A DNA stretch of 64,000 bases from positions 186,001-250,000 of the IMG/VR virus record IMGVR_UViG_3300005253_001115. One strand, 5' to 3'. Position numbers and translations under genes: made by a program. Below the pieces are notes generated by a model. That model searched no databases, was not told where the DNA came from, and saw only the letters and a list, made by a program, of their open reading frames with translations. Shown here in pieces: positions 6,729 to 61,430 of the stretch (positions are counted from its first letter, which is position 1; each line of letters starts with the position of its first letter).

Positions 6729-8825
6729 ATGGCTACAGACTACCTCACGGGGATCAAAACGAAGATCGAGCGGGGCGACCTCAAAGGTGCCGAGCGTGAT
6801 CTTCATCTCCTCATCACCACTAAGGACTTCATGAGGGTCTGGGGTCGTAATGACCTTCCCGTCCTCTGGGGACATATTTCCCACATTACGCTGGACGAGT
6901 CAATTGGTACTGCAAGCGTGAACCTTTATACCGGCAGGCTCATGATCGCTCCCTCTCTTCTTCTGAAGACGGTCCACTCGATCCATGATCTCCTGTTCAT
7001 CATTATGCACGAGCGCGACCATCGTCTGCTCCGGCGCATTTACCGGGTGGACTGGTTCCGCCTACGTAAGCTCCTCGACTACAATGAAGACTGGTTCGAC
7101 AAGGTGTCGGGAGTGGTTGAGGATGCCTGGATCAATGCTAGCGTGCGGTCTTCGATGGGCATCAAGTCTGGCTTTCCCGAGCAGTTCTATTGCTGGACTC
7201 AGGCAGACATTGACAATCCAGGAAAACCCACTCCCGAGAACCCAAGAACTTCTGGCTTCGATCCAGCTAAGAGGCACAAGCTCGGCGACCCCCGGTCCCC
7301 GGAGTTCGCGCTTTTTACCTGCCTTTCTCCCTTCGTCCATGACGACATTCAGAAAGGGCACGAGGGTTTGTACTCGGACACTGACGAACTGCTGAAGGAG
7401 CACGGTCTTACTCCGGTCTCGCACCGAACCAGCAATCCTCGTCGCCGCCATCACCGATACGACTACGGGCGATACGGTACCATGCTCTCGTTCCCAGAGT
7501 GGTACACTGTATTCTGTGATTGGCTGGAGATACACAAGGACGACCTTGCTCGGCCTGCCCCCGGTACCGAGCACGAGGAAGATTGCCCACAGCACCCAGA
7601 TAACAGCGAAGACGAAGGCGAGGGCGAAGGCGAGGGCGAAGGCGAGGGTGAAGGCGAGGGTGAAGGCGAGGGTGAAGGCGAGGGTGAAGGCGAGGGTGAA
7701 GGCGAAGGCGAGGGTGAAGGCGAGGGTGAAGGCGAGGGTGAAGGCGAGGGTGAAGGCGAGGGTGAAGGCGAGGGTGAAGGCTCTGGTTCGGGTGATGACG
7801 CCGATAAGAACGACCCCGCAAAAGGTCACGGACACGGCGGACGAAAGCCTTGCACCTGCAACGGTGGTAACGGCCTGCTCGACGAGCCGATGACTTTGAA
7901 GGAGCGCCTTGCCCGGATACCGGGTCTCATCAAGTCGATTGATGAAATCATGAACAAAGCTCTCGATAAGGACATTCGGCGGGATGCCGGGGACAAGGAC
8001 CCAAACGGCAAGGATCAGCCCATCGAGGTTATGGAAATGTCTGGTCCCAAGGGTGTTAGTTGGGGCGGCAAGGTCCACGGTACAGAGATCGTTCCTAAAG
8101 AGATAGAGGATCTTGACGACTTCGATCGTGGGCTCCTCGAAATGGGTGGCTCGACACTGACCGATTCCCATAAGACTGATACGGTACAAATCAAGGGTGC
8201 GGTAAAGCGCTACGCTGACGATCTGGTACAAAACATCGCTACCATGCGAGTAACGGACCACAGGATTATTCGACCGGATTTCAACATCCCCGCGCGACCG
8301 TCGCGGCGGGATATAATGAGCCTCGGTATGGGTTACATGCCGCCGATGTGGGACCACAACCAGTACCTTGAGCAGAACGAATTGATCGTTTACACGGATG
8401 TATCGGGCTCGATGAGTAACTGGTACTCGGTTGCCCTGTACCTAACGAAGCAACTGCGAGAGTTCGGCTGCACTGCCTACCAGTTTTCGACGGTGATTTG
8501 CCAGCCTGTTCCGGGTCGCGACGACAACATTTTCTGGGGTACGGGCGGGACGCACTTCAATGCAGTCGCCGCCCACATTAAGGCAAAGGGCTTCAAGTCG
8601 GTTATCATCATTACCGACAACTGCGACAACCTGTCTCCTGACTGGCACGAGTTTCTGAGGGATGAGGTTCCCGAGCTATACCTTGTGTTCCTTGAGGATG
8701 GTAATCGACCCCCAAACCTCGATGAGCAGAAGTACGGTTGGGGTGGTGGAAGTCGCGCTCGCGGTTTCTTTGGCACCTCTGAGAACATCACGGGTATTTT
8801 CGACTCGGATGTGGGGAAGAAGTAA
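6729..8825 (+). CDS. metallopeptidase-like plus vWA domain protein (MoxR partner)
   Basis: HExxH (HERDH) followed by an ED-x-x-IN motif; C-terminal MIDAS DVSGS, GGT, IIITD; central (GE)n linker. Confidence 0.82.
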   Translation: MATDYLTGIKTKIERGDLKGAERDLHLLITTKDFMRVWGRNDLPVLWGHISHITLDESIGTASVNLYTGRLMIAPSLLLKTVHSIHDLLFIIMHERDHRLLRRIYRVDWFRLRKLLDYNEDWFDKVSGVVEDAWINASVRSSMGIKSGFPEQFYCWTQADIDNPGKPTPENPRTSGFDPAKRHKLGDPRSPEFALFTCLSPFVHDDIQKGHEGLYSDTDELLKEHGLTPVSHRTSNPRRRHHRYDYGRYGTMLSFPEWYTVFCDWLEIHKDDLARPAPGTEHEEDCPQHPDNSEDEGEGEGEGEGEGEGEGEGEGEGEGEGEGEGEGEGEGEGEGEGEGEGEGEGEGEGEGSGSGDDADKNDPAKGHGHGGRKPCTCNGGNGLLDEPMTLKERLARIPGLIKSIDEIMNKALDKDIRRDAGDKDPNGKDQPIEVMEMSGPKGVSWGGKVHGTEIVPKEIEDLDDFDRGLLEMGGSTLTDSHKTDTVQIKGAVKRYADDLVQNIATMRVTDHRIIRPDFNIPARPSRRDIMSLGMGYMPPMWDHNQYLEQNELIVYTDVSGSMSNWYSVALYLTKQLREFGCTAYQFSTVICQPVPGRDDNIFWGTGGTHFNAVAAHIKAKGFKSVIIITDNCDNLSPDWHEFLRDEVPELYLVFLEDGNRPPNLDEQKYGWGGGSRARGFFGTSENITGIFDSDVGKK
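7614..7781 (+). repeat. in-frame microsatellite (GAAGGCGAGGGT)n encoding poly-(Glu-Gly)
   Basis: About 168 nt of 6/12-nt tandem repeat, directly visible. Confidence 0.97.
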
Positions 8826-27309: not shown

Positions 27310-27608
27310 TTCAAATCCTCCTCAATCTTGCGCAGAAACTCTCGCCAGTCTTTTGGAGAGGAGTTCATGTCTGCTTCGTTCTCTACAGGATTGGAAATAG
27401 TTGGACCCAGATATTCGAAGTCATCGCCCTCTGGAAACCCAAATTGGCTATACCCAGGAATGCGGGCAGCGTACATGGCATCCCACTGCTCTAGTTCTTC
27501 TTCGATCTGGGCTTCCGTGTCTGCCTGGGCCTCTGCCTGGGCCTCTGCCTGGGCCTCTGCCTGGGCCTCTGCATCGTCTTGTATAGCCTTCGGGTGTCTA
27601 GACATCAT
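27306..27608 (-). CDS. acidic hypothetical protein with (AEAQ)n repeat
   Basis: 12-nt tandem repeat GCCTGGGCCTCT at about 27523-27570. Confidence 0.6.
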   Translation of the reverse strand: MMSRHPKAIQDDAEAQAEAQAEAQAEAQADTEAQIEEELEQWDAMYAARIPGYSQFGFPEGDDFEYLGPTISNPVENEADMNSSPKDWREFLRKIEEDLK

Positions 27609-40123: not shown

Positions 40124-40753
40124 CTACCCCACGCGAGAGGTAAAGACGTACTGTGCCATCACAGTGCTTCGTCCCATGTAGCAATAGTATTCGTAGTCCC
40201 GATTGAACCAGATATCTCTTTCCTTCTGAGAAAGCTTCTCTCCCAAGTTGTGAATGAAGTCTTCGGAATTCCAGCGATCATTGGAATACGCTGGGTTATT
40301 CAGCATAACGTTGACGCATAGCATGGTATTAAACGGGCACCTGTGCATAGTGTTTACGGTCATGCTAACCAGTGCTGACGAGATAGCTGTACTGGTGGTA
40401 TCCAAATACACCAAGGCGGGGTTAAATGCTGACAGGTTCGTTGACAGCACCATATCCCACATGCCGTAAAACCATTCGGCCTCAGGCCAACACAGCCTGT
40501 TACCTAGAATGAACTCTTCATTGTTATCCACACCCCGAAGCTGCTCGGCGGTGGCCAAACCAGAAGCCACAATCTGTGCAGATTCAGAATTGGTTCTGGT
40601 TTGCTTGTTGCACAAGAACCAGTATTGGCGGTCCAGCGGAATAACGTAACCGAACACTTTCATGTACAGATTGAACAGCCACGCTCGGGCCGCTATCTTT
40701 TCATCGTTGTTGTATTCTTCTAGCATATTATGCTCCTCTGGTGTTGAAGACAT
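40124..40753 (-). CDS. hypothetical protein
   Basis: 209-aa ORF at the end of the helicase operon. Confidence 0.65.
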   Translation of the reverse strand: MSSTPEEHNMLEEYNNDEKIAARAWLFNLYMKVFGYVIPLDRQYWFLCNKQTRTNSESAQIVASGLATAEQLRGVDNNEEFILGNRLCWPEAEWFYGMWDMVLSTNLSAFNPALVYLDTTSTAISSALVSMTVNTMHRCPFNTMLCVNVMLNNPAYSNDRWNSEDFIHNLGEKLSQKERDIWFNRDYEYYCYMGRSTVMAQYVFTSRVG

Positions 40754-41594
40754 CAGTGTATCCTCGTTTTTTAGCGAGCTTCAAGAGCTTAGGTCCGTAG
40801 AGAGGCCAACCATCTTTGTTGTTCTTTTTCTTCTCTCTCATAGTAGAGAGCTTATTTCCTAGGGACTTCTCTACATGATCCTTAGAGACAGTGCTAGGAG
40901 CCCTGTCTTCGTGAGAATTCATCCACAGGAAAAGCTCTTCAGCCCATTCTAGAGCTTCACGGGTTAGATCGACCCTATTGAAAACAGCAGGGTAACCCCG
41001 TTTCTTAGCAAGCTTCATGAGCTTAGAACCATAGATAAGCCAGCCTCTTTTGTTGTTCTTTTTGATGTCTCTCATAGTAGAGAGTTTGCTTCCGAGAGCT
41101 TTCTCTACTGTGTCTTTAGACACAGCGCTAGGAGTCTTACTTTCGTGAGAATCCATCCACTCGAAAAGTTCTTCGGCCCGGGCCATAGCTACCTTGGTAA
41201 GATCGGTTCTGTTGAAGACATCAAGATAACCACGTTTTTTAGAGAGCTTTAGAAGCTCTGATCCGTAGATAGGCCAGCCCTCTTTGTTGTTCTTCTTGTT
41301 GGTTCTCATCTTAGAAAGCTTTCTACCTAGAACCTTTTCTGTCCGGTCTTTGGATTTCTGACTAGGAATCTTGCCTCCGTGGGAATCCATAAAGGAGAAA
41401 AGAGTTTTGGCCCACTCTATCGCTGAAGCAGTAAGATCCCCATCAGAGTCAGACAAGAACCACGCCAAGTCTTCGGCGTTTCTTTCCCAATACACCATGT
41501 CTTCGGGTCTATGTGAAGACGGCAAGCCTTTGTCGTACCTGTGTCTCTGGTTCCTAAGGTACACGGCGTAGTTGTCGTATGCTTCAGTGTTCAT
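40728..41594 (-). CDS. repeat protein (3 x ~78-aa helicase-associated-like repeats)
   Basis: Repeats EWAxELFxWMDSHxxKxP...EKxLGxKLSxMRxxKK...KRGYxxVFN; shared N-terminal cap. Confidence 0.8.
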   Translation of the reverse strand: MNTEAYDNYAVYLRNQRHRYDKGLPSSHRPEDMVYWERNAEDLAWFLSDSDGDLTASAIEWAKTLFSFMDSHGGKIPSQKSKDRTEKVLGRKLSKMRTNKKNNKEGWPIYGSELLKLSKKRGYLDVFNRTDLTKVAMARAEELFEWMDSHESKTPSAVSKDTVEKALGSKLSTMRDIKKNNKRGWLIYGSKLMKLAKKRGYPAVFNRVDLTREALEWAEELFLWMNSHEDRAPSTVSKDHVEKSLGNKLSTMREKKKNNKDGWPLYGPKLLKLAKKRGYTDVFNTRGA

Positions 41595-42466
41595 CTGGAG
41601 CCTCTGGTGTTGAAGACACGGGGATAACCACGTTGCTTAGCAAGCTTCAACAGTTTTGCACCGTAGGTGGTCCAACCATCTTTGTTGTTCTTTTTTCTTC
41701 TTTTCATATTAGAAAGCTTAGTTCCTAGAACCTTTTCTACTGGGTCTGTAGACATCTGGCTGGGAGCCTTTCCACCGTGGGAATCCATCCAATCAAAAAT
41801 CTCACCAGCTCCCTTTAGGGCTTCACTGTTTAGATCAATAGTGTCAAAGACATCTTGGTAACCACGTTTCTTAGCGAGCTTCAAGAGCTTAGGTCCGTAG
41901 AGTTTCCAACCACCCCTGTTGTTCTTTTTCTTCCTTCTCATGTCGGAGAGCTTACTTCCTAGAGCTTTTTCTACCGGGTCTTTAGAAGACATTCTAGGAG
42001 TTTTTTCGTCGTGAGAGTCCATCCAACCGAAAAGCTCTTTTGCCCACTCTAGAGCTTCTCTGGTTAGATCTGTGGTGTTGAAGACATCAGGGTAACCACG
42101 TTTCTTAGCGAGCGTCAGAAGCTCTGATCCGTAGGTAGTAGTCCAACCACCCCTGTTGTTCTTTTTGTTATGTCTCCAATATGACAGCTTAGTTCCTAGA
42201 ACCTTTTCTACTTGGTCTATAGACCCCTGGGTGGGAGCCTTTCCGCCGTGGGAATCCATCCAATCAAAAACCTCACCAGCTCCCCTTAGAGCTGAGGTAA
42301 CAAGTCCCACGTCAGTGTCGGACAAGAACCACGCCAAGTCCTCAGGATTCCTTTCCCAGTACACTATGTCTTCTGGTTTGTGCGAAGACGGCAAGCCGTT
42401 GTCATACCGGCGTCTCTGGTTCCTCAAGTGTAGAGCATAGTTGTCGTATTTGTCGGAGGCTAGCAT
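41591..42466 (-). CDS. repeat protein (3 x ~78-aa helicase-associated-like repeats)
   Basis: Paralog of both neighbours. Confidence 0.8.
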   Translation of the reverse strand: MLASDKYDNYALHLRNQRRRYDNGLPSSHKPEDIVYWERNPEDLAWFLSDTDVGLVTSALRGAGEVFDWMDSHGGKAPTQGSIDQVEKVLGTKLSYWRHNKKNNRGGWTTTYGSELLTLAKKRGYPDVFNTTDLTREALEWAKELFGWMDSHDEKTPRMSSKDPVEKALGSKLSDMRRKKKNNRGGWKLYGPKLLKLAKKRGYQDVFDTIDLNSEALKGAGEIFDWMDSHGGKAPSQMSTDPVEKVLGTKLSNMKRRKKNNKDGWTTYGAKLLKLAKQRGYPRVFNTRGSR

Positions 42467-43818
42467 TTGGAGCCTCCGGTATTGAAGACACAGGGGTAAC
42501 CTCGTTGCTTGGCGAGCTTCAGAAGCTTAGAACCGTAGGTGGTCCAACCATTTTTGTTGTTCTTTTTGTTCTTTCTCATATTGGAGAGCTTAATCCCTAA
42601 AGCCTTTTCTACTGGGTCTTTGGACCTCCTGCTAGGAAATTTCTCTTCGTGAGCATACATCCAATCGAAAAGTTCGTCAGCCCACTCTAGAGCCTCGCTG
42701 GTTAGATCAACCCTGTTGAAGACACGGGGGTAACCACGTTTCTTAGCAAGCTTCAAGAGCTTAGAGCCGTAGGTAGTCCAGCCATCTTTGTTGTTCTTTT
42801 TGTTCTTTCTCATATTGGAGAGCTTACTGATAAGAGCTTTTTCCACTGGATCTTTGGACCTTTCCTTAGGAACTTTGCCTCCATGGGAAGCCATCCAATC
42901 AAAAAGCTCCTCTGCCCATATTAGAGCCTCGCTGGTTAGATCAACCCTGTTGAAGACACGGGGGTAACCACGTTTCTTAGCAAGCTTCAAGAGCTTAGAA
43001 CCATAGGTAGTCCATCCTCTATCGTTATTCTTTTTGATCTGTTTCATAGCGGAGAGCTTGACCCCTAAAGACTTTTCTACAGGGTCTTTAGCCGTCGTAA
43101 TTGGAGCTTTACCTTCGTGCGAGTCCATCCAAAGGAAAAGCTCTTCAGCCCACTCTAGAGCGTTATAGGTTAGATCAGCCATGTTGAAAACATCAGGATA
43201 ATCACGTTTCTTAGCAAGCTTCAGAAGCTCTGATCCGTAGATGGGCCAGCCTCTATTGTTGCTCATTTGATTCTGCCTCATAGTAGAAAGCTTACTACCT
43301 AGAGATTTTTCTATAAGATCTTTGGACTTCTTGCTAGGAAGCTTGTCCTCGTGCGAGTCCATCCAAAGGAAAAGCTCTTCAGCCCACTCTAGAGTTTCGC
43401 TGATGGGGTCACGACTATTGAAAACATCAGGATAACCCCGCTTCTTAGCGCTCTTTAAGAGGCTGGAACCGTAGGTAGTCCAACCATTTTTGTTGCTTTT
43501 TTTATCTTGTTTCGTATTGGAGAGCTTACTACCTAGAGCTTTTTCTACAGGGTCTTTGCTTCCATCGCGGGGAGCCTTGCCCTCGTTAGAGTCCATCCAA
43601 AGGAAAAGCTCTTCAGCCCGCTCTAGAGCTGAAGCGGTAAGGTCCCCACTAGAGTCAGACAAGAACCATGCTAGGTCTTCGGCGTTTCTTTCCCAGTACA
43701 CGATGTCTTCGGGTATGTGAGAAGATGGCAAGCCATTTTCGTACCTGACACGCTCGTTGCGCAGGAACTTAGCCTTGGCGTCGAAAAAGTCTTCCTTGCT
43801 CTTCTCAGTCCTACGCAT
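42460..43818 (-). CDS. repeat protein (5 x ~78-aa helicase-associated-like repeats)
   Basis: 234-nt periodicity (e.g. 42487, 42721, 42955). Confidence 0.82.
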   Translation of the reverse strand: MRRTEKSKEDFFDAKAKFLRNERVRYENGLPSSHIPEDIVYWERNAEDLAWFLSDSSGDLTASALERAEELFLWMDSNEGKAPRDGSKDPVEKALGSKLSNTKQDKKSNKNGWTTYGSSLLKSAKKRGYPDVFNSRDPISETLEWAEELFLWMDSHEDKLPSKKSKDLIEKSLGSKLSTMRQNQMSNNRGWPIYGSELLKLAKKRDYPDVFNMADLTYNALEWAEELFLWMDSHEGKAPITTAKDPVEKSLGVKLSAMKQIKKNNDRGWTTYGSKLLKLAKKRGYPRVFNRVDLTSEALIWAEELFDWMASHGGKVPKERSKDPVEKALISKLSNMRKNKKNNKDGWTTYGSKLLKLAKKRGYPRVFNRVDLTSEALEWADELFDWMYAHEEKFPSRRSKDPVEKALGIKLSNMRKNKKNNKNGWTTYGSKLLKLAKQRGYPCVFNTGGSKC

Positions 43819-52954: not shown

Positions 52955-53296
52955 TTAGTGTATCCTACCTTTCATGGTCGCAGTTGAGACTGAAGTGGTG
53001 TCCTTCAGCGGATCTTGTCCTGCGGGAACGATGTAATCGAAACCCCGTATTTCTTGCTTTACTTTATTCAAGGTCGCTACCACACCATCCCAATACATCG
53101 AGAGATCCGGTGGCATGTCCCCGCCAGAGACCACTACGTGGTAGGCATTCGTCCTGATCTTCTGCTCAATCGCGAATCCAAGCTGGTGAGGGCCGGTGAT
53201 AATGGAACCCATCTGGCCCAGCTTGTCATTCCAGTTGACGATCTCGTAATCGAGGTATCCGATGCCTTTGCCGTTTAGCGTGAATCTGATACGCAT
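52955..53296 (-). CDS. hypothetical protein
   Basis: 113-aa ORF coupled to the upstream large gene. Confidence 0.6.
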   Translation of the reverse strand: MRIRFTLNGKGIGYLDYEIVNWNDKLGQMGSIITGPHQLGFAIEQKIRTNAYHVVVSGGDMPPDLSMYWDGVVATLNKVKQEIRGFDYIVPAGQDPLKDTTSVSTATMKGRIH

Positions 53297-55557
53297 TAGT
53301 AGCCCCTCAGCGTGGCGATGATAAGGGCCATGTGCTCAGGGTCGTCCCGAACCATAGCACCCCACATGTGCTCGTTGTAGAATGCCTGGACCCCCATAGA
53401 GACTAGCTCGCCATGCCCTTCCCGGTCACCGTAGCTCTTACCACAGTAGACAGAGAAGAAGTGGTCAGGAATGAACTCCTCGTTTTTGTCATAGTGCCTC
53501 AGGTCAGGATACGGCTGCCCTGTTTTGGGGTCAATATCCCCGTTCCTGACGAGGGGCTGGCCTTCTGTCCGGTTCTTGTAGAAACCAGAGAAACGTCGAG
53601 CTGTATCGGGGTTGCTAAACTCCATGTGGTGCGCGAATTCGTGGATGGCGATATCGTCCCTGTCCGAAGCCGACCCCCCGCTGTACTTGCGTGTGGTGTC
53701 CCACATCTCATGCTTAGGTACCTTCTTGAGGTCCGCCCCTACACTGAGGCAGATACGCCCGTCGGACGAGCTGGCGTAGGCTCGCACCATAACCTCCGAT
53801 TCCCATGTTATGCCCACCATCCCCGGCCCACCCACCACATCACGGTGGGCAATCGAGAACAGGTCTTGTAGGCTCTCTTGGATCTTAGCGGAATTCGGAT
53901 AGCGTGAGCTTTCCTCCAGCGTCTCCTTGGATATCTGGTCTCGGTGCTTCTGTCTCAAGACCAACAGCTTCTTTCCTGTCAAGCCAGCGATGCCCTTGCC
54001 TTTCGCGACTGTGTAGTCCTCATCTTTTTCGTTAATCTCAGCCCACGCAGCATTCCCTACATTGTGCAGTATTTCACCAGCGCTTTCGGCATCAATTTGG
54101 GTGTATTGGTTGACTTTCCTCATTGCATTTTTGATGGGTTGGCGAATTTTCTCCGCCTCCTTCAGGATCTTTTCGCTCGCCCGTAGTACGCCCATGTGCG
54201 CGTTTCTTCCGAGTTGGTCGATGGCATCTTTGTCGTCTTCTAGGTCAGAGACCAGTTTAGCGAATTCACCCGTCTCCAGAGACTTGCTGTCTCTACGCTT
54301 TAGGATGTCAGCCTTTCTAGTTTGGTACTCCTTTTCGAATTCCTCAGAAGCGTATTCTGCCTCTGCCAGGGCGGACCCTGCCAGCATGTAAGCTCTTTGT
54401 GCCGCGTCGATACCAGACCAATCAGCCCACTGCTTCATTTCCGTGGTCGCTTTCTCAGCAGCTTTGCGGTGATCGTGAAGATAGGAGTTCGGTGTCCATG
54501 ATTCACTTAGACCGAAGCTCTCCCACAACATCCTGTTCGCCGACTCATCTCCAACTCTGGCCGAGCGGTCTAGTATTGCCATCGCCAGCTTCGTATTAGT
54601 CTCGAAGGGGGACCTTTCAACGGGGTCGATTTGTTGCCCCATTCGCATTCGAAGCAAGTTCTGAAGAGTAACGGGTGCATCGGGATCATCCACGAACATC
54701 CTAGCTAAGTCGGCTCCTCCGAGTGTGGGCGACTCCCGCCAACTCGCCAGAAGCTCTTTCATTTTCGTTATCTTGCGGTAGGCGAGGTCCCGCCCAGAGT
54801 CCGGGATAGCGTCCATGTCAAAATTAGACAACTGTAGTAGATCTTCTACCTCTAGAGTTTCCGGTCTATTTTGTACCTTGTCCCAGGTTTGAATGTCTCG
54901 CGGGTCGTCAGCCTTGATCGAGCTATTGAACTGATCCACAGCGAACTGGGCTTTGTCTACTTTCTTTTTGAAGTAGTTACCGCCTCTCTTGCTGGGCGGA
55001 ATATCCTTATTGCTAATAAACTCCAGCGCCTCGTTTACAGCGGCTTGTAGCGCCTCGACGGCCTTCAGGTTCTCGGCCCTGTCGTCGCTTTGGAGAGCCT
55101 GGGCAGCCTCTTTCAGCTTGATGGCTTTGGTGTTGCCCTTCGGGGTTCTAACCAGTACAGCCTGAAGGGACTCAAGAGCTTGAGCCACCATGTCCTTCTG
55201 GCGTGCCCACTGTCCTTCCGGCACCAACTCAATAGCCTCCGCAGAGGGGCCAGGCTCCTCAGGAGCGGGCTCGCTGGGCTTGTTGTCATCCCAGTCCACA
55301 TCCCGCTCGTTACGCTCGTCAGCGGAGTTCTCGTCGGTCCAGTAAGGGTTCTCTCCTGGCTCTGGTCGGTGAGCTTCTCCGTCGTGGCAGTCCTTGTCTT
55401 TTGAGATCCACCCGTCACCACAAGGGATATCGTCGGGACTGTTAGGTACTTTGTCGCCCGCGTAAGCAGGGTCCTCGTCTTCCGTAATGAAGCTGTCCCA
55501 ATTCAAAAAATCACGCATCGGTAGCCACCTAAAGGGGTTTACACTAGAAATAACCAT
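53296..55557 (-). CDS. large protein with C-terminal HExxH zincin-like domain (possible virion or ejected protein)
   Basis: N-terminal CGDGWISKDKDCH, helical middle, IHEFAHHME...YCGKSY...ELVSMG. Confidence 0.65.
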   Translation of the reverse strand: MVISSVNPFRWLPMRDFLNWDSFITEDEDPAYAGDKVPNSPDDIPCGDGWISKDKDCHDGEAHRPEPGENPYWTDENSADERNERDVDWDDNKPSEPAPEEPGPSAEAIELVPEGQWARQKDMVAQALESLQAVLVRTPKGNTKAIKLKEAAQALQSDDRAENLKAVEALQAAVNEALEFISNKDIPPSKRGGNYFKKKVDKAQFAVDQFNSSIKADDPRDIQTWDKVQNRPETLEVEDLLQLSNFDMDAIPDSGRDLAYRKITKMKELLASWRESPTLGGADLARMFVDDPDAPVTLQNLLRMRMGQQIDPVERSPFETNTKLAMAILDRSARVGDESANRMLWESFGLSESWTPNSYLHDHRKAAEKATTEMKQWADWSGIDAAQRAYMLAGSALAEAEYASEEFEKEYQTRKADILKRRDSKSLETGEFAKLVSDLEDDKDAIDQLGRNAHMGVLRASEKILKEAEKIRQPIKNAMRKVNQYTQIDAESAGEILHNVGNAAWAEINEKDEDYTVAKGKGIAGLTGKKLLVLRQKHRDQISKETLEESSRYPNSAKIQESLQDLFSIAHRDVVGGPGMVGITWESEVMVRAYASSSDGRICLSVGADLKKVPKHEMWDTTRKYSGGSASDRDDIAIHEFAHHMEFSNPDTARRFSGFYKNRTEGQPLVRNGDIDPKTGQPYPDLRHYDKNEEFIPDHFFSVYCGKSYGDREGHGELVSMGVQAFYNEHMWGAMVRDDPEHMALIIATLRGY

Positions 55558-55578
55558 CTAATGAGGGCATCGGATTCC

Positions 55579-56115
55579 CTAGTTGCCCCTTTCTTTCATC
55601 TTTTTGGCCCACTTCTTCTGCCACTCGGACTGCGGAGTGTCGTTCAGAATATCCTCGACCGAAGCCGTAGCCCTGTGTGGCCCAGAGGCTCTTGTTTGCG
55701 ATCTACGGGCTTTTCTCCTTCTAGGCGATGGCGGAGTGGCCTTAGCGAAGAGGTGGTCCCTCTGCTCGTCATAGTAACCGTCAGGGCCAGATTTGTAATA
55801 CTTCAGGGTTGGATCGTTGGTTCCCCAGTTCGGCGGGGGCGGCTTCCTTCTGGCTTCCTTCCGCTTCTTCTCCCTATGGTGGTAAGAGGTCCCCGTGGGG
55901 GGTTTTGACCTTATCACCGGCTCTCGGTACGGACACTTCCCTGCCTTGGTGGGGTTGGTGATTGCTCGGTAGGCCCAATTGACCAATTGGAACTCCATAT
56001 CTGGTAGATCCGGGTTCAGGTCAGGATGGGTTTCCCTGGAGAGCTTCCGGTAAGCGTTCTTGATCCGCTTCCTAGTGGAACCTCTTTCAATTTCGAGCAC
56101 CTTGTACGGGTCCAT
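55579..56115 (-). CDS. J-domain (DnaJ-like) protein
   Basis: MDPYKVLEI...IKNAYRKLSRETHPDLN...FQLVNWAY. Confidence 0.85.
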   Translation of the reverse strand: MDPYKVLEIERGSTRKRIKNAYRKLSRETHPDLNPDLPDMEFQLVNWAYRAITNPTKAGKCPYREPVIRSKPPTGTSYHHREKKRKEARRKPPPPNWGTNDPTLKYYKSGPDGYYDEQRDHLFAKATPPSPRRRKARRSQTRASGPHRATASVEDILNDTPQSEWQKKWAKKMKERGN

Positions 56116-56273
56116 GCGTCTAAATAGCGCATTTAGATGTTACAGTCTCCAAAAGATAAAGCCTCCGAAGCCTAACATAGCCAAGAGCGCAATTACCTCA
56201 ATTATGTCCATTAGTGACCAACCGCACCTCAGTAGATATATTTCGGCGCGTACCAACCGTACACCTAAACTGT

Positions 56274-56678
56274 TCATTTTCTCTCCTCTGCCGCGAAATG
56301 CTGCTGAACATCCGACAGAAGCTCGTCCAGCTTCCCCTCAAGGATGTCCTTGTAGCGATAGGTCTTCCCGGAACGGTGGTCCTTCACACGCTGATCGGAC
56401 TCGTGATAAGTCCTTACACGTTCTGTACTTGTAGCCTCTACTTGCGTTTTAGCGGCCTCTTTCATCAGAGGCACGAGGATATTCGTCATGCGCTTGAAGG
56501 CAGCCTTCTTGTTCTTTCCCTGCTCCTTATGCTCCTCGGCTTTAGCTGTAATCCCAGTTTCTACATGTGTTAATCGAACAGCCGTATCCCTTTTATTTCG
56601 ATTTTGACCACCTTTGCCGCTAGCGCGGTAGTAGTCGATTCTGATGTCTTCTTTACGAACTGTCTGTGGCCACGCCAT
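56274..56678 (-). CDS. stand-alone GGQ peptide release factor domain protein (ArfB/PrfH-like)
   Basis: YRASGKGGQNRNKRDTAVRLTH...Q..NK..A...RVRTY...RVKDHR; start MAWPQT. Confidence 0.88.
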   Translation of the reverse strand: MAWPQTVRKEDIRIDYYRASGKGGQNRNKRDTAVRLTHVETGITAKAEEHKEQGKNKKAAFKRMTNILVPLMKEAAKTQVEATSTERVRTYHESDQRVKDHRSGKTYRYKDILEGKLDELLSDVQQHFAAEERK

Positions 56679-56736
56679 TTTGTTTCTCACATGCTTATGT
56701 TTAGGAGGGAGTATTACTAAAGAAAGGATCATCTTT

Positions 56737-57540
56737 ATGTTACTATCATTGCCTTTTGAAGAGATAATTGCACGGTACCAGAAAGGAGAATCCCAAGCAC
56801 AACTTGCTAATAGCTTTAGTGTAGACCGGCGAACTATTAGGAGAAGGCTGGTTAAAGCTGATATACCTCTTAGGTCTGGTGGAGAGGCTTCCAAGGTCCA
56901 AAAAAACAAAGCCTTTACTGCATCCACTGTGGTAAACGAATTGGTCGATGGAATGTTATTAGGTGATGCTTGGATAGAGCAAGGACAAGACAACGCTCGC
57001 CTTGGTATTGAAGTGACCAAAAAATCCGAAGGGTGGATAGAACAGATATCTGATATCCTCACAGCGCACGAGGTCAAGCATTCCATAGGGTATAGAAAAC
57101 CCAGAGAAAAAATAATAAACGGCATTCATACCCGATCAAAGGAAAGCGTTATGCTTAGGACCAGTCTATATCCTAATTTTGCTGTCCAAAGACTACGGTG
57201 GTATCCAGAAGGTACAAAAATAGTGCCCAGAGATTTAGAACTTACTGCAAGTAGTATAGCTCATTGGTATTGGGGTGACGGATCAACCAGCAAGTATATG
57301 GTCCGTCTATACACGAACAATTTCTTAGAAAAAGACTGTGAATTCCTAGTAAGCTGTCTGTTGGAGTTCGGAGTAAGTTTTTCAATAAGCAAAAGTCGCA
57401 AAAATCCTGTTCTTAGTCTGTACAACAATTCTGAAAGAGAAAGGTTTCTGGACCTAGTTCGGGACCACGTTCCAGAATGTTTCGAATACAAAGTACAAAA
57501 ACCTGTAATAGTGAGAAGAAGCAAGCCTACTCTTTTTTGA
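56737..57540 (+). CDS. LAGLIDADG homing endonuclease with N-terminal HTH
   Basis: GMLLGDAWI and HWYWGDGS motifs, WYPEGTKIVP, LYTNNF, FEYK; AT-rich. Confidence 0.85.
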   Translation: MLLSLPFEEIIARYQKGESQAQLANSFSVDRRTIRRRLVKADIPLRSGGEASKVQKNKAFTASTVVNELVDGMLLGDAWIEQGQDNARLGIEVTKKSEGWIEQISDILTAHEVKHSIGYRKPREKIINGIHTRSKESVMLRTSLYPNFAVQRLRWYPEGTKIVPRDLELTASSIAHWYWGDGSTSKYMVRLYTNNFLEKDCEFLVSCLLEFGVSFSISKSRKNPVLSLYNNSERERFLDLVRDHVPECFEYKVQKPVIVRRSKPTLF

Positions 57541-57546
57541 AAATTC

Positions 57547-57980
57547 CTGCGCCGTAGACACCATAGTACCGGATTACACTGTCATGTTGGTCTACGGCGC
57601 AGAACGAGGCACGGCATTCTCCTTTTGGATTACACTGCTATGTAGGACGTTCCTCTTTGAAAATTCCTGCGCCGCAGACATCATAATGTCGGGTTACATC
57701 ACCGAGTCGGTCTGCGGCGCAAGTTAAAATGTAGTAGACACGGCAAGACCACTCGGGCTACAACTTCAACACGGCCGTGTCTACTGTGTTAGAAAAGGAG
57801 GCGCGACATTCTCCTTTTGGGTTACACTGCTATGTGGGCCGTGCCTCTTTGAAAATTCCTGCGCTGCATGGCACGGCTCTGGGGGGTTACAACATCGCTA
57901 AGGCCACACAGCGCAGGTTAAAATGTAGTAGACACGGCATATCCCAAACGGGTTACAACATTCTGCTGGCCGTGTCTACT
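57547..57980 (-). ncRNA. TIGR-like stem-loop guide array A (7 units)
   Basis: Each unit on + strand: stem-CA-N9-NGG(G/A)TTACA-N9-NGG-stem; cores at 57559, 57615, 57679, 57744 (8-nt first spacer, GGGCTACA), 57807, 57872, 57938. Confidence 0.88.
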
Positions 57981-57989
57981 TTCGTTAGA

Positions 57990-58814
57990 TCAATCCGATA
58001 CCTTCCGCCACTGCTTCCACAGTTCCCGCAGGATGCGCTTCGACAGGAGCCTACGCTGGTGTAGGAAGATGTGGCCCGTTGTCCAGTCAGGGTGTGCAGC
58101 AGCAGCTTTGGCCTTCACTCCCTCAGAATATTGGTAGAATTCATTGTTGGTCTTCTTGCCGTTCTGGTGAACAGTACCCTGCACAACGAACATCATGGAT
58201 CTCCTGCTCGGGTTGTAACCGTGCAGTTTAGCCATTTCAGTGCCACGTCGAAGGCGCTGGCGAACCATGGGATCTTGCGCATTCTCGGACACCATACCTA
58301 GCCCAAAACGCTTCCACAATTTAGCGGGCGTGGCGAAATTACGCAAGTCGGCTCCGGCTTCTGCCAATATCCTTCCTACAGCTAGGAGGCTCAGGCCGGG
58401 GGTTCCTTTACCGGGGCGACCAACCCACGAAGCGATCGGCATACCTGCCACTATGGCAGTGATGTCTTTGTGGTATTGCCTTATTTGGGGGTCGAAGCCC
58501 CTGATAGCAGGGACCATAGCGAGCGCCATAATCTCCACTTTCGCAGCAAATACCTCTATTGGGTCGGTGGAGGTCCGATCAATCTCGTCAGGCTTCACAT
58601 GCAACATCCACTTTTTGTGGACGGCAGTTGCCAGCGCTCCGTCTTTTGTGCAGAGAGCGTACTTCTTAACGAAGCACGTCTTACCTTTGCAGTGGTGGTC
58701 CTGCACAGCACGCTTGATGACGCCATGTAACTGCTGGTTGAGGGACTCTCTTGCTCTCTCAAGATTCAGACAATCTCTATGGAGGCCGAGGAGTTTAGTG
58801 ATTTCGTTGTGCAT
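57990..58814 (-). CDS. Nop-domain / IS110 C-terminal-like RNA-binding protein lacking a nuclease domain (TasA-like)
   Basis: Starts directly with a coiled coil; PGLSLLAVGRILAEAG.DLRNFATPAKLWKRFGLG, GYNPSRRS, H..QRRLLSKRILRELWKQWR; no DEDD/RuvC or HNH domain and no IS110 SSG motif. Confidence 0.82.
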   Translation of the reverse strand: MHNEITKLLGLHRDCLNLERARESLNQQLHGVIKRAVQDHHCKGKTCFVKKYALCTKDGALATAVHKKWMLHVKPDEIDRTSTDPIEVFAAKVEIMALAMVPAIRGFDPQIRQYHKDITAIVAGMPIASWVGRPGKGTPGLSLLAVGRILAEAGADLRNFATPAKLWKRFGLGMVSENAQDPMVRQRLRRGTEMAKLHGYNPSRRSMMFVVQGTVHQNGKKTNNEFYQYSEGVKAKAAAAHPDWTTGHIFLHQRRLLSKRILRELWKQWRKVSD

Positions 58815-58829
58815 TTTCTAATCCTTGTA

Positions 58830-59152
58830 GGAGCGGCACGGAATGCTCCAAACGGGTTACACTGCATCTATGTCCGTGCCGCTCCGTAATATAGGGCGGT
58901 TGGTCAATGAGATTTCGGGTTACAAATGGGAGTTGGACCAACCATCCTGTAAAGTTGGGGCGACGCCGCACAGCGGATTCGGGTTGCATGAGCGCATCGA
59001 CAGCGTAGCCCCTTTGTAAGTTATGAGCGGCGCGACACTCTCCCAAAGGGTTGCATCACGGCGGTGGTCGCGCCGCTCTGTTATATTGAGTATTTTAGTG
59101 AGGTTGGTCACTCTTCTAGAGGGTTACACCGGTCTTTTGGACCAGCCTCACT
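58830..59152 (-). ncRNA. TIGR-like stem-loop guide array B (5 units)
   Basis: Same architecture; cores at 58842, 58905, 58969, 59036, 59109. Confidence 0.88.
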
Positions 59153-59157
59153 GTGAT

Positions 59158-59739
59158 TTACATGTAAGTCCTCTCGCGTAGTCTCTCGACAAACTCATCC
59201 TGAACGACTGAGCCTACCGTGCGCTTGTCTCCGGCGGAGACGCCTTCGGCCTGCATCTTGTCTGCAATGGCGAAGAGCATCCGTGCGTCACGTCCGAAGG
59301 TGCCAGACTTCTTGTCTCGCATCTGCGCCTCGGTGGTCACCTGATCGAACGTAGCAGAGCGCAACTTCACGCCCCCGTGGGTCAGGTAGAATGTGTCCAT
59401 GTAGAGCGCAGCGACGGTCTCAGCACTTGCTGCGTCGGCTGCTGCTGTTCTCTTGGACTTGTTTGGCTTGGCGGCTCCGGTTGAGGGTGCCTGGGGCGTG
59501 ATAGGCAGAACCCGAGACTGCGACCGAAGTCGCTGCACGATGTTGTTGATCTGACTGTTGGCGAAGCGCTTCCAGACTTCCGTCTCGATAGCAGACGCCA
59601 TCGCAGGGCTCAGATTATCAATCTCAGCATCAGCGACAGCAAGAAAGGCAGCTTTCGCCTTCTCCCAATCTCCGCTGCTTGCTGTCCACGCTGTCTCAGC
59701 CCACTTGGCAAAGACCTCTTCTATGTCTACGGAACTCAT
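59158..59739 (-). CDS. unknown protein embedded between guide arrays
   Basis: 193-aa ORF with AAGGA SD, co-oriented with the TasA-like gene. Confidence 0.75.
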   Translation of the reverse strand: MSSVDIEEVFAKWAETAWTASSGDWEKAKAAFLAVADAEIDNLSPAMASAIETEVWKRFANSQINNIVQRLRSQSRVLPITPQAPSTGAAKPNKSKRTAAADAASAETVAALYMDTFYLTHGGVKLRSATFDQVTTEAQMRDKKSGTFGRDARMLFAIADKMQAEGVSAGDKRTVGSVVQDEFVERLRERTYM

Positions 59740-59787
59740 ACGTTTTCCTTCTTTATCCCCGTGGCAAAATCGCCCGGTGGAAATGTA

Positions 59788-59903
59788 GCGGTCCTGACAC
59801 CTTGAAAGTGGGTTACAAGTTCTTTATGGTCAGGACCGCCGTTGAAGTATAGCAGGTCGGTCAGTGGCGACAAGGGTTACAAACACAGAAAGGACCGACA
59901 CTG
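59788..59903 (-). ncRNA. TIGR-like stem-loop guide array C (2 units)
   Basis: Cores at 59798 and 59862 with inverted-repeat stems. Confidence 0.85.
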
Positions 59904-59931
59904 AATCCAATGAATAGGTAGCTTTCGAACA

Positions 59932-60387
59932 TCAGCTTTCAACCTCTTTCTTCTCCAAGTAGAAGAAATCCAGACCCTCAGGTTCTTTCTCTCCTCGAAA
60001 GATGAGAGCAGCAGCCCCCATGCAAATATTGTCACCTAGGATCTTCTGTACCTTGGCAACCGCTTGCCCAGAAGACACCACATCGTCCACGATAAGGTAC
60101 TTCTTTTTGCTGAACCCAGGGCCGCGCGTGCGGTTCTCCAGGGTTAGCACCTTCACTCGTGGCTTGTTGAGTATCCCGGCCACCACGAAGGCAAGCTCGA
60201 TGCCGCCGATAATCGGGGTGGCGATAAAGTCTATCTCGTCTCGCAACGTTTCGGGGATCAACTCTGCAAGTTGCTCTGCATACTCTGTCGTAGCTCGGCT
60301 GTCGAGTAGATCGAAGTCGTAGTAATACGGAGAACTCCTACCAGAGGTAAGTTCGTGGTCTTCTTTGATCCGGCATTCCTCGAACAT
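59932..60387 (-). CDS. orotate phosphoribosyltransferase-like type I PRTase
   Basis: LTSGRSSPYYYD, PRPP-binding LIVDDVVSSG. Confidence 0.78.
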   Translation of the reverse strand: MFEECRIKEDHELTSGRSSPYYYDFDLLDSRATTEYAEQLAELIPETLRDEIDFIATPIIGGIELAFVVAGILNKPRVKVLTLENRTRGPGFSKKKYLIVDDVVSSGQAVAKVQKILGDNICMGAAALIFRGEKEPEGLDFFYLEKKEVES

Positions 60388-60399
60388 GCTGCCTACACC

Positions 60400-60720
60400 T
60401 TACGTATTTTCGATCCCTTTCGAGATGACCTTGTAAATTGTGTGTGGAGCATACGTTACCTTAGTTCCATCTGCAAGGGTGTGGGTATACCCTCGACGGA
60501 TGATGGACGAAACCTTGCAATCAACCAGAATCTCGGCTGCTGTTTCCCACCGGTCATTCATGTTGGTCGAGTAAGACAGCGGCAGTTTGAAGACCTGAAG
60601 CGGTCTGGGAATTCCTTGGGCGGTACCTTCGCTCGTGACGAATACCGTCACGAGGTAGTCCGTCTTCGTGAGAGTCGGAGGGCTCAAGATACCGAGCCGA
60701 ACTAGAATATGCCTAAACAT
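60400..60720 (-). CDS. hypothetical protein
   Basis: Likely start MFRHIL, downstream of AAGGAG. Confidence 0.5.
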   Translation of the reverse strand: MFRHILVRLGILSPPTLTKTDYLVTVFVTSEGTAQGIPRPLQVFKLPLSYSTNMNDRWETAAEILVDCKVSSIIRRGYTHTLADGTKVTYAPHTIYKVISKGIENT

Positions 60721-61054
60721 CACTTTCTCCTTTCGTTCCAACGGAACGGATTTGGTTTGACCGTCGGAGCCGCGATCGAATGCTACAAACAAGGGTGATA
60801 ATCGCGTAGGCCAATACGATTAGCGCGAATATCGTTGTTTTCATGCTGGTCTCCTGGGCGAATCGCTAGTCCGAATCACAGCGCAAGCTGGAAGTAACAA
60901 CTACGATGTTGTTACGGGATTCTTCCCGGTCGTAGTCGTCCACATCCCGGTCTCCCGGTGAAAAGTATTTACGCAAGCACTCAGCTTCCGTTCCCTCTGT
61001 GCAAATGATACTTTCGTTTGCACCGCTGTATACTATCAGTCCCATTTTGTCTCC

Positions 61055-61243
61055 TTAGGTGACAGGTGTAGTTTCCTCTTCGGCAGCCAGCCTCATAGCT
61101 TTAGCCTTTTTTTGAGCTTCTATGGCTTGCCTTCGACCGGACTTTTTTAGCTCTGCTGGATAAGCATGGCCATAACAGATGATACGGTTGGGAATTGCCT
61201 CTGCCTTGCACCCCTTGACTTCGCAGGTTTTCCAAATTGCCAT
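61055..61243 (-). CDS. small zinc-finger protein with GRRQAIEAQK motif
   Basis: C....C........C..H. Confidence 0.55.
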   Translation of the reverse strand: MAIWKTCEVKGCKAEAIPNRIICYGHAYPAELKKSGRRQAIEAQKKAKAMRLAAEEETTPVT

Positions 61244-61430
61244 GTCGCTTCTCCAGCGGGTAGATGCCTATTCCATGTCTCCTTCAACTTCAACCAGCTT
61301 TCGGTCTGTGTACTTGCCTCGAACTTTATTTACCTTGTCGGTCGCTTCGGCGATTTCTCTAGCCTCTTCGTCAGACAGGTCGTGATCCAGCACGAGCCTC
61401 TTCGCGGAGAACACAATTCTTTCGAATAGG

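What the first reader, a model, noticed from the sequence alone, without database searches (positions are those of the whole stretch)
57535..57980. Array A grew by block duplication, and spacers were rewritten inside retained scaffolds
Seen: the stems fall into three families in the order alpha-beta-alpha-gamma-beta-alpha-gamma. Alpha units (1, 3, 6) are all preceded by TTTGAAAATTCCTGCGC. Gamma units (4, 7) share GTTAAAATGTAGTAGACACGGCA...GGCCGTGTCTACT. Beta units (2, 5) keep identical spacers. A block of about 190 bp (beta-alpha-gamma) was therefore duplicated; the alpha and gamma copies now have unrelated 9-mers inside similar or identical scaffolds, while beta spacers are conserved despite stem mutations. 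Inference: spacers are replaced in a localised way or are under strong diversifying selection, and the beta guide is under purifying selection. This is a clue to how such arrays acquire specificity.
Basis: partly seen in the sequence, partly recalled or inferred. Interest (0 to 1): 0.75.

Follow-up and report, generated by a model that had tools for sequence, protein, structure and literature searches.

The report
Phage TIGR guide array grown by recombination
The seven hairpins are a guide-RNA array (a stem-loop TIGR array) next to its TasA protein gene in a 267-kb phage. The array did grow by duplication of a three-unit block, but the differing guide sequences in the two copies are older variants shared with related phages, not recent rewrites.

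Summary
Window 57547-57980 has seven hairpin units in three stem families, with a block of about 193 bp present twice.

- **Sense strand.** The minus strand is the sense strand. Each unit reads stem-CC-N10-TG-TAAY-CC-N10(9)-TG-stem, a box C/box D dual-spacer stem-loop TIGR unit.
- **Protein.** The array starts 9 nt after the stop of a 274-aa gene (57990-58814, minus). Profile and fold searches identify this gene as a nuclease-less Tas protein (TasA).
- **Not an artefact.** The array is identical in an independent record. A one-run assembly contig spans it, and three further records carry it.
- **Duplication junction.** Unit beta5 is a hybrid, so the duplication came from unequal recombination between two beta-type units. 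Relatives carry an extra unit (beta') before gamma7, giving a (beta-gamma-alpha) period of about three.
- **Rewriting only partly supported.** Identical scaffolds with different spacers are common in this phage group. Both spacer sets of the window also occur in relatives, some spacer series differ stepwise, and the four records of this array type (window, L025, L049, L050) show no change in 139 spacer nucleotides.
- **Beta guide.** It is conserved across lineages and reads like a gene start.

The system is a known kind. The recombination scars and spacer series bear on the open question of how TIGR arrays change.

The parts
57990..58814 (-). tasA: 274-aa TIGR-associated protein with an N-terminal coiled coil and a C-terminal Nop-like RNA-binding domain, and no nuclease domain
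   Evidence: Profile A2 hits PDB 9MTY TasR at E 3.9e-26 and TasH at 8e-12. The AF2 model has pLDDT 95.8. Foldseek ranks TasR and TasH first, then IS621 and Nop5. 23 of 73 family members hit Pfam Transposase_20.
57927..57980 (-). Unit gamma7, first unit after tas. Stem AGTAGACACGG/CCGTGTCTACT, spacer A AGCAGAATGT, loop TGTAACCC, spacer B GTTTGGGATA.
   Evidence: The same spacers, with 0-2 changes, occur in L044, L045-48, L049 and L050.
57858..57917 (-). Unit alpha6. Stem CCTGCGCTGTGTGG/CCATGCAGCGCAGG, spacers TTAGCGATGT / CCCAGAGCCG.
   Evidence: The near-identical stem (0-2 of 22 positions differ) occurs in L021, L052, L044 and L045, with other or related spacers.
57795..57850 (-). Unit beta5, the hybrid unit at the duplication junction. 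The 5' flank, 5' arm (GAGGCACGG) and both spacers are of beta type. The 3' arm (TCGCGCCTCC) and the following linker TTCTAACAC are of beta' type. The crossover zone is about 57804-57814.
   Evidence: The stem mismatch sits at the one base pair that differs between beta (A-U) and beta' (G-C). The MFE fold pairs its 5' arm with the 3' arm of beta2.
57733..57785 (-). Unit gamma4. Same stem as gamma7, spacers GTGTTGAAGT / GAGTGGTCT (9 nt), loop TGTAGCCC.
   Evidence: Its spacers are related to those of the gamma units of L001 and L021, with 6-9 of 19 positions different.
57666..57723 (-). Unit alpha3. Spacers GACTCGGTGA / GACATTATGA.
   Evidence: The L001/L051 alpha unit has the identical spacer B and 7/10 matching positions in spacer A.
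57603..57658 (-). Unit beta2. Spacers TACATAGCAG / AAAAGGAGAA. The stem is degenerate, with 9 of 12 pairs.
57547..57602 (-). Unit alpha1, the last unit. Spacers AACATGACAG / GGTACTATGG. It abuts beta2 with no gamma unit between them.
57603..57989 (-). Two tandem copies of the block of about 193 bp (gamma-alpha-beta in tas sense): 57795-57989 and 57603-57794.
   Evidence: Direct repeats D1, D3 and D4 have spacings of 192-195 bp. Alignment, segment counts.
58830..59152 (-). Array B: five units of the same architecture upstream of tas.
   Evidence: L050 is 483/483 identical across 58815-59297, which includes this array.
59787..59899 (-). Array C: two further units between the 193-aa gene and the phosphoribosyltransferase gene.
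56644..57540 (+). LAGLIDADG homing endonuclease gene, inserted at the end of array A. It interrupts an alpha-to-beta-type linker (GGAATTTTCAAA|GAGGCACGG).
   Evidence: Pfam LAGLIDADG_2 at 4e-22. It is absent from L049 and from a read variant.

Best explanation
**What it is.** Array A is the downstream stem-loop TIGR array of a tasA locus in a jumbo phage (a 266,640-bp virus record).
- It is read on the minus strand.
- Each hairpin carries two 10-nt spacers, each flanked by box C (CC) and box D (UG).
- By analogy with characterised TasA systems, each processed hairpin would guide a TasA dimer to DNA, with one spacer pairing to each strand, to bind and repress rather than cut.

**How the array is built.** It is remodelled by homologous recombination between similar units.
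- An ancestral order beta'-gamma-alpha-beta underwent an unequal crossover between beta and beta'. The crossover lay inside the shared GGAGAAUGCCG at the spacer B / 3'-arm border.
- This produced beta'-gamma-alpha-[beta/beta' hybrid = beta5]-gamma-alpha-beta.
- Further events gave the third partial period (beta2-alpha1). In the window's lineage, beta' was then deleted.

**What the two blocks are.** They are old paralogues or alleles. Each gamma-alpha spacer set exists on its own in relatives.

**How spacers change.** They change much faster than stems, loops and linkers, which pairing and protein or processing contacts hold in place.
- Part of that change is stepwise substitution and 1-nt indels.
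- Part looks abrupt, and its mechanism is unknown.
- Some guides are conserved: beta, gamma7 and u0 (the first downstream unit of L021 and L052).

**Shown and inferred.** Shown here: architecture, Tas homology, duplication, hybrid unit, comparative pattern. Inferred: transcription, processing, DNA targeting, order of events.
For: **Architecture**
-.
- Stem covariation: across 67 distinct units, 91-100% of pairs are canonical at each of 11 stem positions, against 12-49% with the partner shifted. Four to six pair types occur per position.

**Tas identity**
-.
- Distant Tas relatives also sit beside units of the same pattern.
- All 14 convincing units in the genome lie at this locus.

**The array is real**
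- LAZR01000125.1 is 100% identical over 5822 bp.
- A 5385-nt one-run contig spans the array with 0 differences. An independent 2019 sample spans 57536-57967 with 1 difference.

**Junction and history**
- beta5 composition and the beta' unit in L049 and L050. The X4 contig is read the same way.
- Recombination scars: an apparent gamma 3'-arm scar in L045, and a beta/epsilon remnant in L049.

**Spacer sets are older than this array**
- gamma7/alpha6 spacers in L044 and L045; gamma4/alpha3-type in L001, L051 and L021.

**Rate contrast**
-.
- L021 against L052: stems differ at 9/110 positions, spacers at 31/100. Beta plus u0 spacers differ at 2/40, the other units at 29/60 (counted and the L021/L052 unit sequences).

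**Literature**
- Stem-loop TIGR units and TasA repression are described in PMC12045711 and bioRxiv 10.64898/2026.09.09.750476.
Against: - There is no expression or processing data for this locus.
- No target was found in the phage's own genome.
- The hybrid status of beta5 rests on one covarying base pair plus flanks and spacers.
- The order of events (old duplication with differential loss, or a crossover between diverged co-infecting genomes) is not resolved.
- tas is a poor clock, because the locus is mosaic.
- Some spacer changes are too abrupt for ordinary substitution. For example alpha6' spacer A differs at 7/10 positions between L021 and L052, whose tas genes differ at 3/79 fourfold sites.
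- Complex prediction was not run by the tool.
Confidence: 0.68

Rival explanations
1. A recent duplication in this genome was followed by a dedicated, localised spacer-replacement process, a TIGR counterpart of adaptation. That process swapped the 10-mers of the alpha and gamma copies and left the scaffolds untouched.
For: - gamma4 and gamma7 have identical stems and linkers (1/43 positions differ), but their spacers differ at 11/19 positions.
- Near-identical genomes L021 and L052 differ at 7/10 and 9/10 positions in spacer A of two units whose stems are unchanged.
- New spacers are not copies of other units' spacers.
Against: - Both spacer sets exist separately in relatives.
- There are 0 changes in 139 spacer nt among the four records of this array type.
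- The gamma4-class and alpha6 spacer-B series are stepwise and include indels.
- alpha6 and alpha3 also differ in the inner stem.
- No candidate adaptation gene was seen among the annotated neighbours, and the genome has no reverse transcriptase.
Confidence: 0.2
2. The two blocks are alleles from two diverged phage lineages. A single unequal crossover during co-infection placed them in tandem, so no spacer change at all followed the duplication.
For: - The locus is mosaic. Between the window and L050, tas is 91.8% identical while the upstream array region is 483/483 and array A 99.3%.
- L049 and L050 share an identical tas but have different upstream arrays.
- Single-block arrays exist with either spacer set.
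Against: - L045 keeps what looks like a scar of a second gamma unit. This suggests the double block is ancestral to several lineages and was later lost.
- L021 combines a gamma4-class unit with an alpha6-class unit, so units reassort individually.
Confidence: 0.3
3. The tandem block is an assembly artefact of a repeat-rich region.
For: The copies share exact stretches of up to 29-41 nt, which could confuse a short k-mer assembler.
Against: - An independent record is identical.
- One-run contigs span the whole array with 0-1 differences in two unrelated studies.
- Two ENA scaffolds carry the same order.
Confidence: 0.02
4. The hairpins are not DNA-targeting guides. They could be box C/D-like guides for RNA modification, or structural elements such as terminators or recombination sites.
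For: - The protein fold is shared with Nop5 and the IS110 RNA-binding domain.
- No DNA target was found.
Against: - The closest sequence and fold matches are TasR and TasH, not Nop5.
- The unit geometry matches published stem-loop tigRNAs.
- TasA proteins were shown to bind DNA and repress (bioRxiv 10.64898/2026.09.09.750476; 10.64898/2026.08.11.744272).
- The protein has no DEDD or RuvC domain.
- Terminator and promoter scans are at background level.
Confidence: 0.05

Closest known systems
Stem-loop TIGR arrays with TasA (Peromyscus gut PlTasA, Bifidobacterium longum BlTasA; Faure et al. 2025, PMC12045711; Xu et al. 2026, bioRxiv 10.64898/2026.09.09.750476)
   Same: - A nuclease-less Nop-domain protein with a coiled coil.
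- Sub-arrays upstream and downstream of tas.
- Units made of a variable palindromic stem, box C, spacer A, a short conserved loop, spacer B and box D.
- Stem sequence conserved only next to the boxes.
- Found in a phage.
   Different: - Here the stems fall into a few families arranged periodically, so the array's duplication history can be read.
- A CUU processing motif is not consistently present at the stem bases.
- Nothing has been tested experimentally.
Dual-repeat TIGR arrays (TasR, TasH; 36-nt tigRNA)
   Same: [quoted passage not shown] Relatives at about 50% Tas identity (L022, L024, L027) have one shared 12-nt palindromic stem with a 42-nt period, which approaches a repeat array.
   Different: There is no fixed edge repeat, the stems are 11-15 bp long and heterogeneous, and the protein has no nuclease domain.
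CRISPR arrays
   Same: A tandem array of conserved scaffolds with variable guide segments on a mobile element. Arrays lose and gain units by recombination between repeats.
   Different: There is no Cas1/Cas2-type adaptation module and no polarised leader-end growth. The spacers are split and 10 nt long. The scaffolds themselves differ between units.
IS110/IS621 bridge RNA and archaeal or eukaryotic box C/D snoRNA clusters
   Same: A homologous RNA-binding domain and the logic of two guide segments flanked by box C/D-like anchors (PMC12045711).
   Different: There is no DEDD recombinase domain, no fibrillarin partner and no K-turn. This is a multi-unit array rather than a single bridge RNA.

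Membership tests
TIGR-Tas system | A Tas protein with a Nop-type RNA-binding domain homologous to TasR, TasH or TasA | tested here: met
   The profile of the family hits 9MTY TasR at E 3.9e-26 and TasH at 8e-12. The model has pLDDT 95.8, and its best folds are TasR and TasH with TM 0.5-0.65.
TIGR-Tas system | A coiled-coil dimerisation region N-terminal to the Nop domain | tested here: inconclusive
   The model has long helices at residues 2-37 and 56-123, and the Foldseek alignments to TasR and TasH span 269-295 columns, about the whole 274-aa model. Dimerisation itself was not tested.
TIGR-Tas system | [quoted passage not shown] | tested here: met
   14 units at the locus read CC-N10-TG-N4-CC-N10-TG on the tas strand. 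The same pattern sits beside tas in more than 10 relatives.
Stem-loop subtype of TIGR | Variable but consistently palindromic flanks that form a stem supported by covariation | tested here: met
   Across 67 distinct units, 91-100% of pairs are canonical at 11 stem positions, with 4-6 pair types per position. The shifted control gives 12-49%. Units were selected by stem score, so the percentage is inflated, but the diversity of pair types is not.
TasA subtype | No HNH or RuvC nuclease domain | tested here: met
   The protein has 274 aa and no Pfam nuclease hit. The model is all-helical except for one short hairpin. The TasH alignment begins at TasH residue 56.
TIGR-Tas system | The array is transcribed and processed into unit-length tigRNAs bound by Tas | not testable with these tools
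   No RNA data were laid on the locus.
TIGR-Tas system | Guide-dependent binding of double-stranded DNA through both spacers | not testable with these tools
   No significant target in the phage's own genome. One exact 20-nt match for the beta guide in another jumbo phage is within chance expectation.
CRISPR-Cas | Identical direct repeats of 23-50 nt with cas genes, including an adaptation module | tested here: not met
   There is no constant repeat, no Rfam CRISPR family and no cas domain among the neighbours.
Diversity-generating retroelement | A reverse transcriptase with a template/variable repeat pair | tested here: not met
   There is no RVT_1 match in the 266,640-bp genome, while the control genomes do match.

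The most novel reading that the evidence does not exclude
TIGR spacers may turn over through a localised process that is not ordinary point mutation and that can act on one spacer of a unit.
- Spacer A is replaced in two units between two near-identical phages, while spacer B, the stems and the neighbouring guides stay put.
- Arrays grow and shrink by unit-level unequal recombination.
- This recombination may be stimulated by a homing endonuclease whose apparent insertion site is repeated inside the array.
- The conserved beta guide would track the ribosome-binding site and start codon of a specific target gene.
Probability: 0.22. Interest if true: 0.85.

Novelty: new member of a known kind. 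Interest (0 to 1): 0.58.

Why it matters
Both primary TIGR papers state that how TIGR arrays emerge, expand and acquire spacers is unknown, and that no adaptation machinery has been found (PMC12045711; bioRxiv 10.64898/2026.09.09.750476).

In this phage group the stems differ between units, so each unit carries its own tag and the array's history can be read. The available records show:
- a duplication junction;
- deletions and recombination scars;
- conserved guides next to fast-changing guides;
- pairs of near-identical genomes that differ in a single spacer.

Together they form a natural series for testing whether TIGR specificity changes by recombination, by mutation under selection, or by a dedicated mechanism. 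They also help find natural targets. The system itself is not new.

Tried and rejected
- **Databases with no hit.** Rfam found no family. The phage collection gave no DNA match. A PDB search with the shallow 8-sequence profile found nothing, and the deeper profile was needed. The first AF2 model built from 8 sequences was poor in the Nop domain.
- **Self-targeting.** Both possible spacer geometries were searched in the genome. Hits with up to 4 mismatches match the shuffled null.
- **Spacers borrowed from other units.** Sharing between stem families is not above the null: 6 observed against 4.2 ± 2.1.
- **DGR.** No reverse transcriptase.
- **Promoter and terminator scan.** At background level.
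- **More relatives via the gamma stem pattern.** None in viral contigs or genome contigs.
- **Target scans in viral contigs for the gamma7 and beta guides.** One exact hit, which is within chance expectation.
- **Protein-RNA complex prediction.** The tool did not fold it.
- **A reading I withdrew.** I first took the X4 contig to show gene conversion of beta' spacer B. The laid piece only had to be 80% alike, so it is equally consistent with the L049-type beta'.
- **tas as a clock.** I dropped tas fourfold-site divergence as a clock for the arrays once the locus proved mosaic.

Full report
**1. The observation**

Window 57547-57980 holds seven hairpins with 11-15 bp stems around a 29-30 nt interior. 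The interior is centred on GGRTTACA. That octamer occurs 18 times in the window against 2.4 expected.

- TTTGAAAATTCCTGCGC occurs exactly three times, once before each alpha unit.
- The gamma units share 29- and 37-nt stretches. The beta-plus-linker stretch of 74 nt is 89% identical between copies. All have a spacing of 192-195 bp.

**2. What the units are**

Read on the minus strand, every unit is stem-CC-N10-TG-TAAY-CC-N10-TG-stem. Spacer B of gamma4 has 9 nt. This is the published stem-loop TIGR unit: two short spacers, each bounded by box C and box D, a short loop between them and a variable palindromic stem outside (PMC12045711, section 9; bioRxiv 10.64898/2026.09.09.750476).

The array begins 9 nt after the stop codon of a 274-aa minus-strand ORF (57990-58814).
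- The ORF has no Pfam hit of its own.
- A 73-sequence profile headed by it matches the Nop domain of TasR (PDB 9MTY, E 3.9e-26) and TasH (8e-12). 9MTY is the TasR structure of Faure et al..
- The AlphaFold model has pLDDT 95.8. Its best structural matches are TasR, TasH, IS621 and Nop5, in that order.
- There is no nuclease domain, so the protein is a TasA.

Seven more units lie upstream, at 58830-59152 and 59787-59899. These 14 are the only convincing units in the 266,640-bp virus record. Across 67 distinct units from this phage group, each of 11 stem positions is 91-100% paired with four to six pair types. The array RNA folds with z = -7.8.

**3. Artefact excluded**

- LAZR01000125.1 is 100% identical over window 55493-61314.
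- In Logan's one-run assemblies, a 5385-nt contig of the likely source run covers 57536-60500 with no difference.
- A 621-nt contig from an unrelated 2019 study covers 57536-57967 with one difference.
- Two ENA scaffolds (L049, L050) carry the same unit order.

**4. Substitution density between the two blocks**

| Segment | Differences |
|---|---|
| Linkers | 0/16 |
| gamma stems | 0/22 |
| alpha outer stems | 1/13 |
| Boxes plus loops | 2/36 |
| gamma spacers | 11/19 |
| alpha spacers | 14/20 |
| beta spacers | 1/20 |
| beta stems | 5/24 |

- gamma scaffold against gamma spacers gives p = 1.5e-6.
- beta spacers against the other spacers gives p = 1.4e-5.
- beta stems against beta spacers gives p = 0.20.
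- The inner 6-7 bp of the alpha stems also differ, with compensation, so for alpha only the outer scaffold is retained.

**5. Relatives**

Protein searches and exact look-ups gave eleven close loci with Tas 80-95% identical. In tas sense, the downstream arrays are as follows:

| Locus | Downstream array |
|---|---|
| Window | g7 a6 b5 g4 a3 b2 a1, then the homing endonuclease |
| L049, L050 | b' g7 a6 b5 g4 a3 b2 a1 |
| L044 | g7 a6 a |
| L045-48 | g7 a6 epsilon, an apparent gamma 3'-arm scar, a |
| L001, L051 | g4-like a3-like |
| L021 | u0 b' g a6' a'' b and three more |
| L052 | u0 a6'' a'' b and one more |

The X4 contig also continues from gamma7 into an extra unit whose 5' half, AGAGGCGCGG-CC-CTCCAGCCCT, is that of beta'. 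The full array is therefore (beta gamma alpha) repeated nearly three times. The window has lost beta'.

**6. The junction**

Beta and beta' differ in four ways:
- one covarying stem pair (A-U against G-C);
- spacer A;
- the first four positions of spacer B;
- their flanks.

Beta5 has the 5' flank, 5' arm, spacer A and spacer B of beta. It has the 3' arm base and the downstream linker-plus-gamma of beta'. Its stem mismatch sits at the diagnostic pair.

An unequal crossover between beta and beta', inside the shared GGAGAATGCCG, turns b'-g-a-b into b'-g-a-b5-g-a-b, which is the array observed. The fold of the whole transcript pairs the beta5 5' arm with the beta2 3' arm, as expected if those two arms were once one hairpin. 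Other scars show that such events recur: the gamma 3'-arm remnant in L045 and a beta/epsilon remnant after alpha1 in L049.

**7. Were spacers rewritten?**

*For the pattern.*
- Among 74 pairs of distinct units with at most 2/22 stem differences, stems differ at 3.7% of positions, loops at 8.8%, spacer A at 50% and spacer B at 45%. Unrelated units differ at 72%.
- L021 and L052, whose tas genes differ at 3 of 79 fourfold sites, differ at 7/10 and 9/10 positions in spacer A of two units with unchanged stems. Their beta and u0 guides differ at 0/20 and 2/20.

*Against rewriting after this particular duplication.*
- gamma7 and alpha6 spacers recur with 0-2 changes in L044, L045-48, L049 and L050.
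- gamma4 spacers are related to those of L001 and L021 (6-9 of 19 positions different, well below the 72% of unrelated pairs).
- alpha3 spacer B is identical in L001.
- The window differs from L050 at 3 positions and from L049 at 4 within array A. All lie in stems or a loop, and none falls in the 139 spacer nt.
- The alpha6 spacer-B series (CCCAGAGCCG, CCAGAGCCCG, CCCGAGCCGA, CCGGGGCCGA) is stepwise with indels.

Spacers are not copied from other units, and the genome has no reverse transcriptase. Both spacer sets are therefore older than the window's array. Spacer change is heterogeneous between guides. Its mechanism is unresolved: mutation under selection, very short conversion tracts, or something dedicated.

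**8. Mosaicism**

Between the window and L050:
- the stretch upstream of tas that holds array B is 483/483 identical;
- tas is 91.8% identical, with 67 mismatches and a 12-nt indel;
- array A is 99.3% identical;
- the downstream flank is 97.8% identical.

L049 and L050 share an identical tas but have different upstream arrays. Recombination breakpoints therefore cluster at the arrays, and tas divergence cannot date them.

**9. Function**

No target exists in the phage's own genome. The beta guide, read as spacer B plus the reverse complement of spacer A, is AAAAGGAGAA-CTGCTATGTR. That is a Shine-Dalgarno sequence, seven bases and ATG.
- Only beta units have this property, 5 of 69 distinct units.
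- The L021/L052 allele, CAAAGGAGAACTGTTATGCT, changes only positions outside the SD and the ATG.
- This fits a guide that tracks a gene start, in line with the reported repressor activity of TasA.
- One exact match lies at a gene start in an unrelated 240-kb phage. My rough expectation for one such scan is about 0.2 chance hits, based on an assumed collection size. I do not count the match as a target.

**10. Novelty**

The system is a member of the known stem-loop TIGR-TasA class. What is not in the literature I could search is a readable example of array growth by unequal recombination and of unit-by-unit spacer dynamics.

Noticed in passing
window 56644-57540 (+); L049 4275-4303; window 57836-57864: The LAGLIDADG homing endonuclease gene is polymorphic. 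It is absent from L049 and from a variant that is minor in run X1 and major in X4. It interrupts an alpha-to-beta-type linker at GGAATTTTCAAA|GAGGCACGG. The uninterrupted 29-nt site of L049 is still present intact inside array A, at the alpha6-to-beta5 junction. The enzyme might therefore cut within its own array and promote recombination there.
   Followed up: partly
window 57990-58814 versus L050 485-1297: tas is a divergence island. It is 91.8% identical (67 mismatches, a 12-nt indel, 25 amino-acid changes), while the flanking upstream array region is 483/483 identical and array A is 99.3%. Between L021 and L052, tas has 12 amino-acid changes in 179 residues but only 3 of 79 fourfold-site changes. 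This suggests allele exchange or positive selection on Tas.
   Followed up: partly
window 57809-57836 and 57617-57644 (beta5 and beta2 spacers); L053 8116-8135: The beta guide read as B + rc(A) is AAAAGGAGAACTGCTATGTR, that is SD-N7-ATG. Beta alleles in relatives vary only outside the SD and the ATG. An exact match lies at the start of a gene of unknown function in a complete 239,960-bp phage (IMGVR_UViG_3300028045_000001) that has no Tas homologue. The match is probably chance.
   Followed up: partly
window 57839-57850 with 57603-57614: The MFE fold of the array RNA pairs the beta5 5' arm with the beta2 3' arm, enclosing gamma4 and alpha3. The two beta units may therefore not form their own hairpins.
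   Followed up: no
window 58830-58885 (unit B1): In this unit the closing pair between box C and box D is A-U instead of C-G (AC...TT rather than CC...TG), a covariation at the box pair itself. Its spacer B, GTTTGGAGCA, resembles that of gamma7, GTTTGGGATA (7/10).
   Followed up: no
L022 3729-4204, L024 1546-1770, L027 3346-3758: Relatives with about 50% Tas identity have arrays in which one 12-nt palindromic stem (GCCGCCGGGCTC / GAGCCCGGCGGC) is shared by neighbouring units, with a 42-nt period. This is an intermediate between stem-loop and dual-repeat arrays. Gene callers annotate the array as an ORF.
   Followed up: no
window 53296-56700 versus L001 5640-8866: The block of RF-1-domain gene, DnaJ-domain gene and 753-aa gene is on the tas strand in the window, L049 and L050, but inverted in L001, L051 and L045. 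In those loci a 94-aa ORF follows the array. Array A sits at the rearrangement boundary.
   Followed up: no
window 59787-59899 versus L001 2832-2957 and 9947-10012: The array C units of the window and of L001 share neither stems nor spacers, so whole units have turned over. L001 also has a dispersed copy of one unit 7 kb away on the other strand, with related spacers.
   Followed up: no
window 40742-43629: There are long tandem repeats with a period of 234 bp (also 468 bp), about 10 copies at 74-76% identity. They were seen in the tandem-repeat scan and not examined.
   Followed up: no
window 7614-7781 and 27520-27572: There are 12-bp tandem repeats of 14.5 and 4.4 copies, probably coding repeats. 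They were not examined.
   Followed up: no
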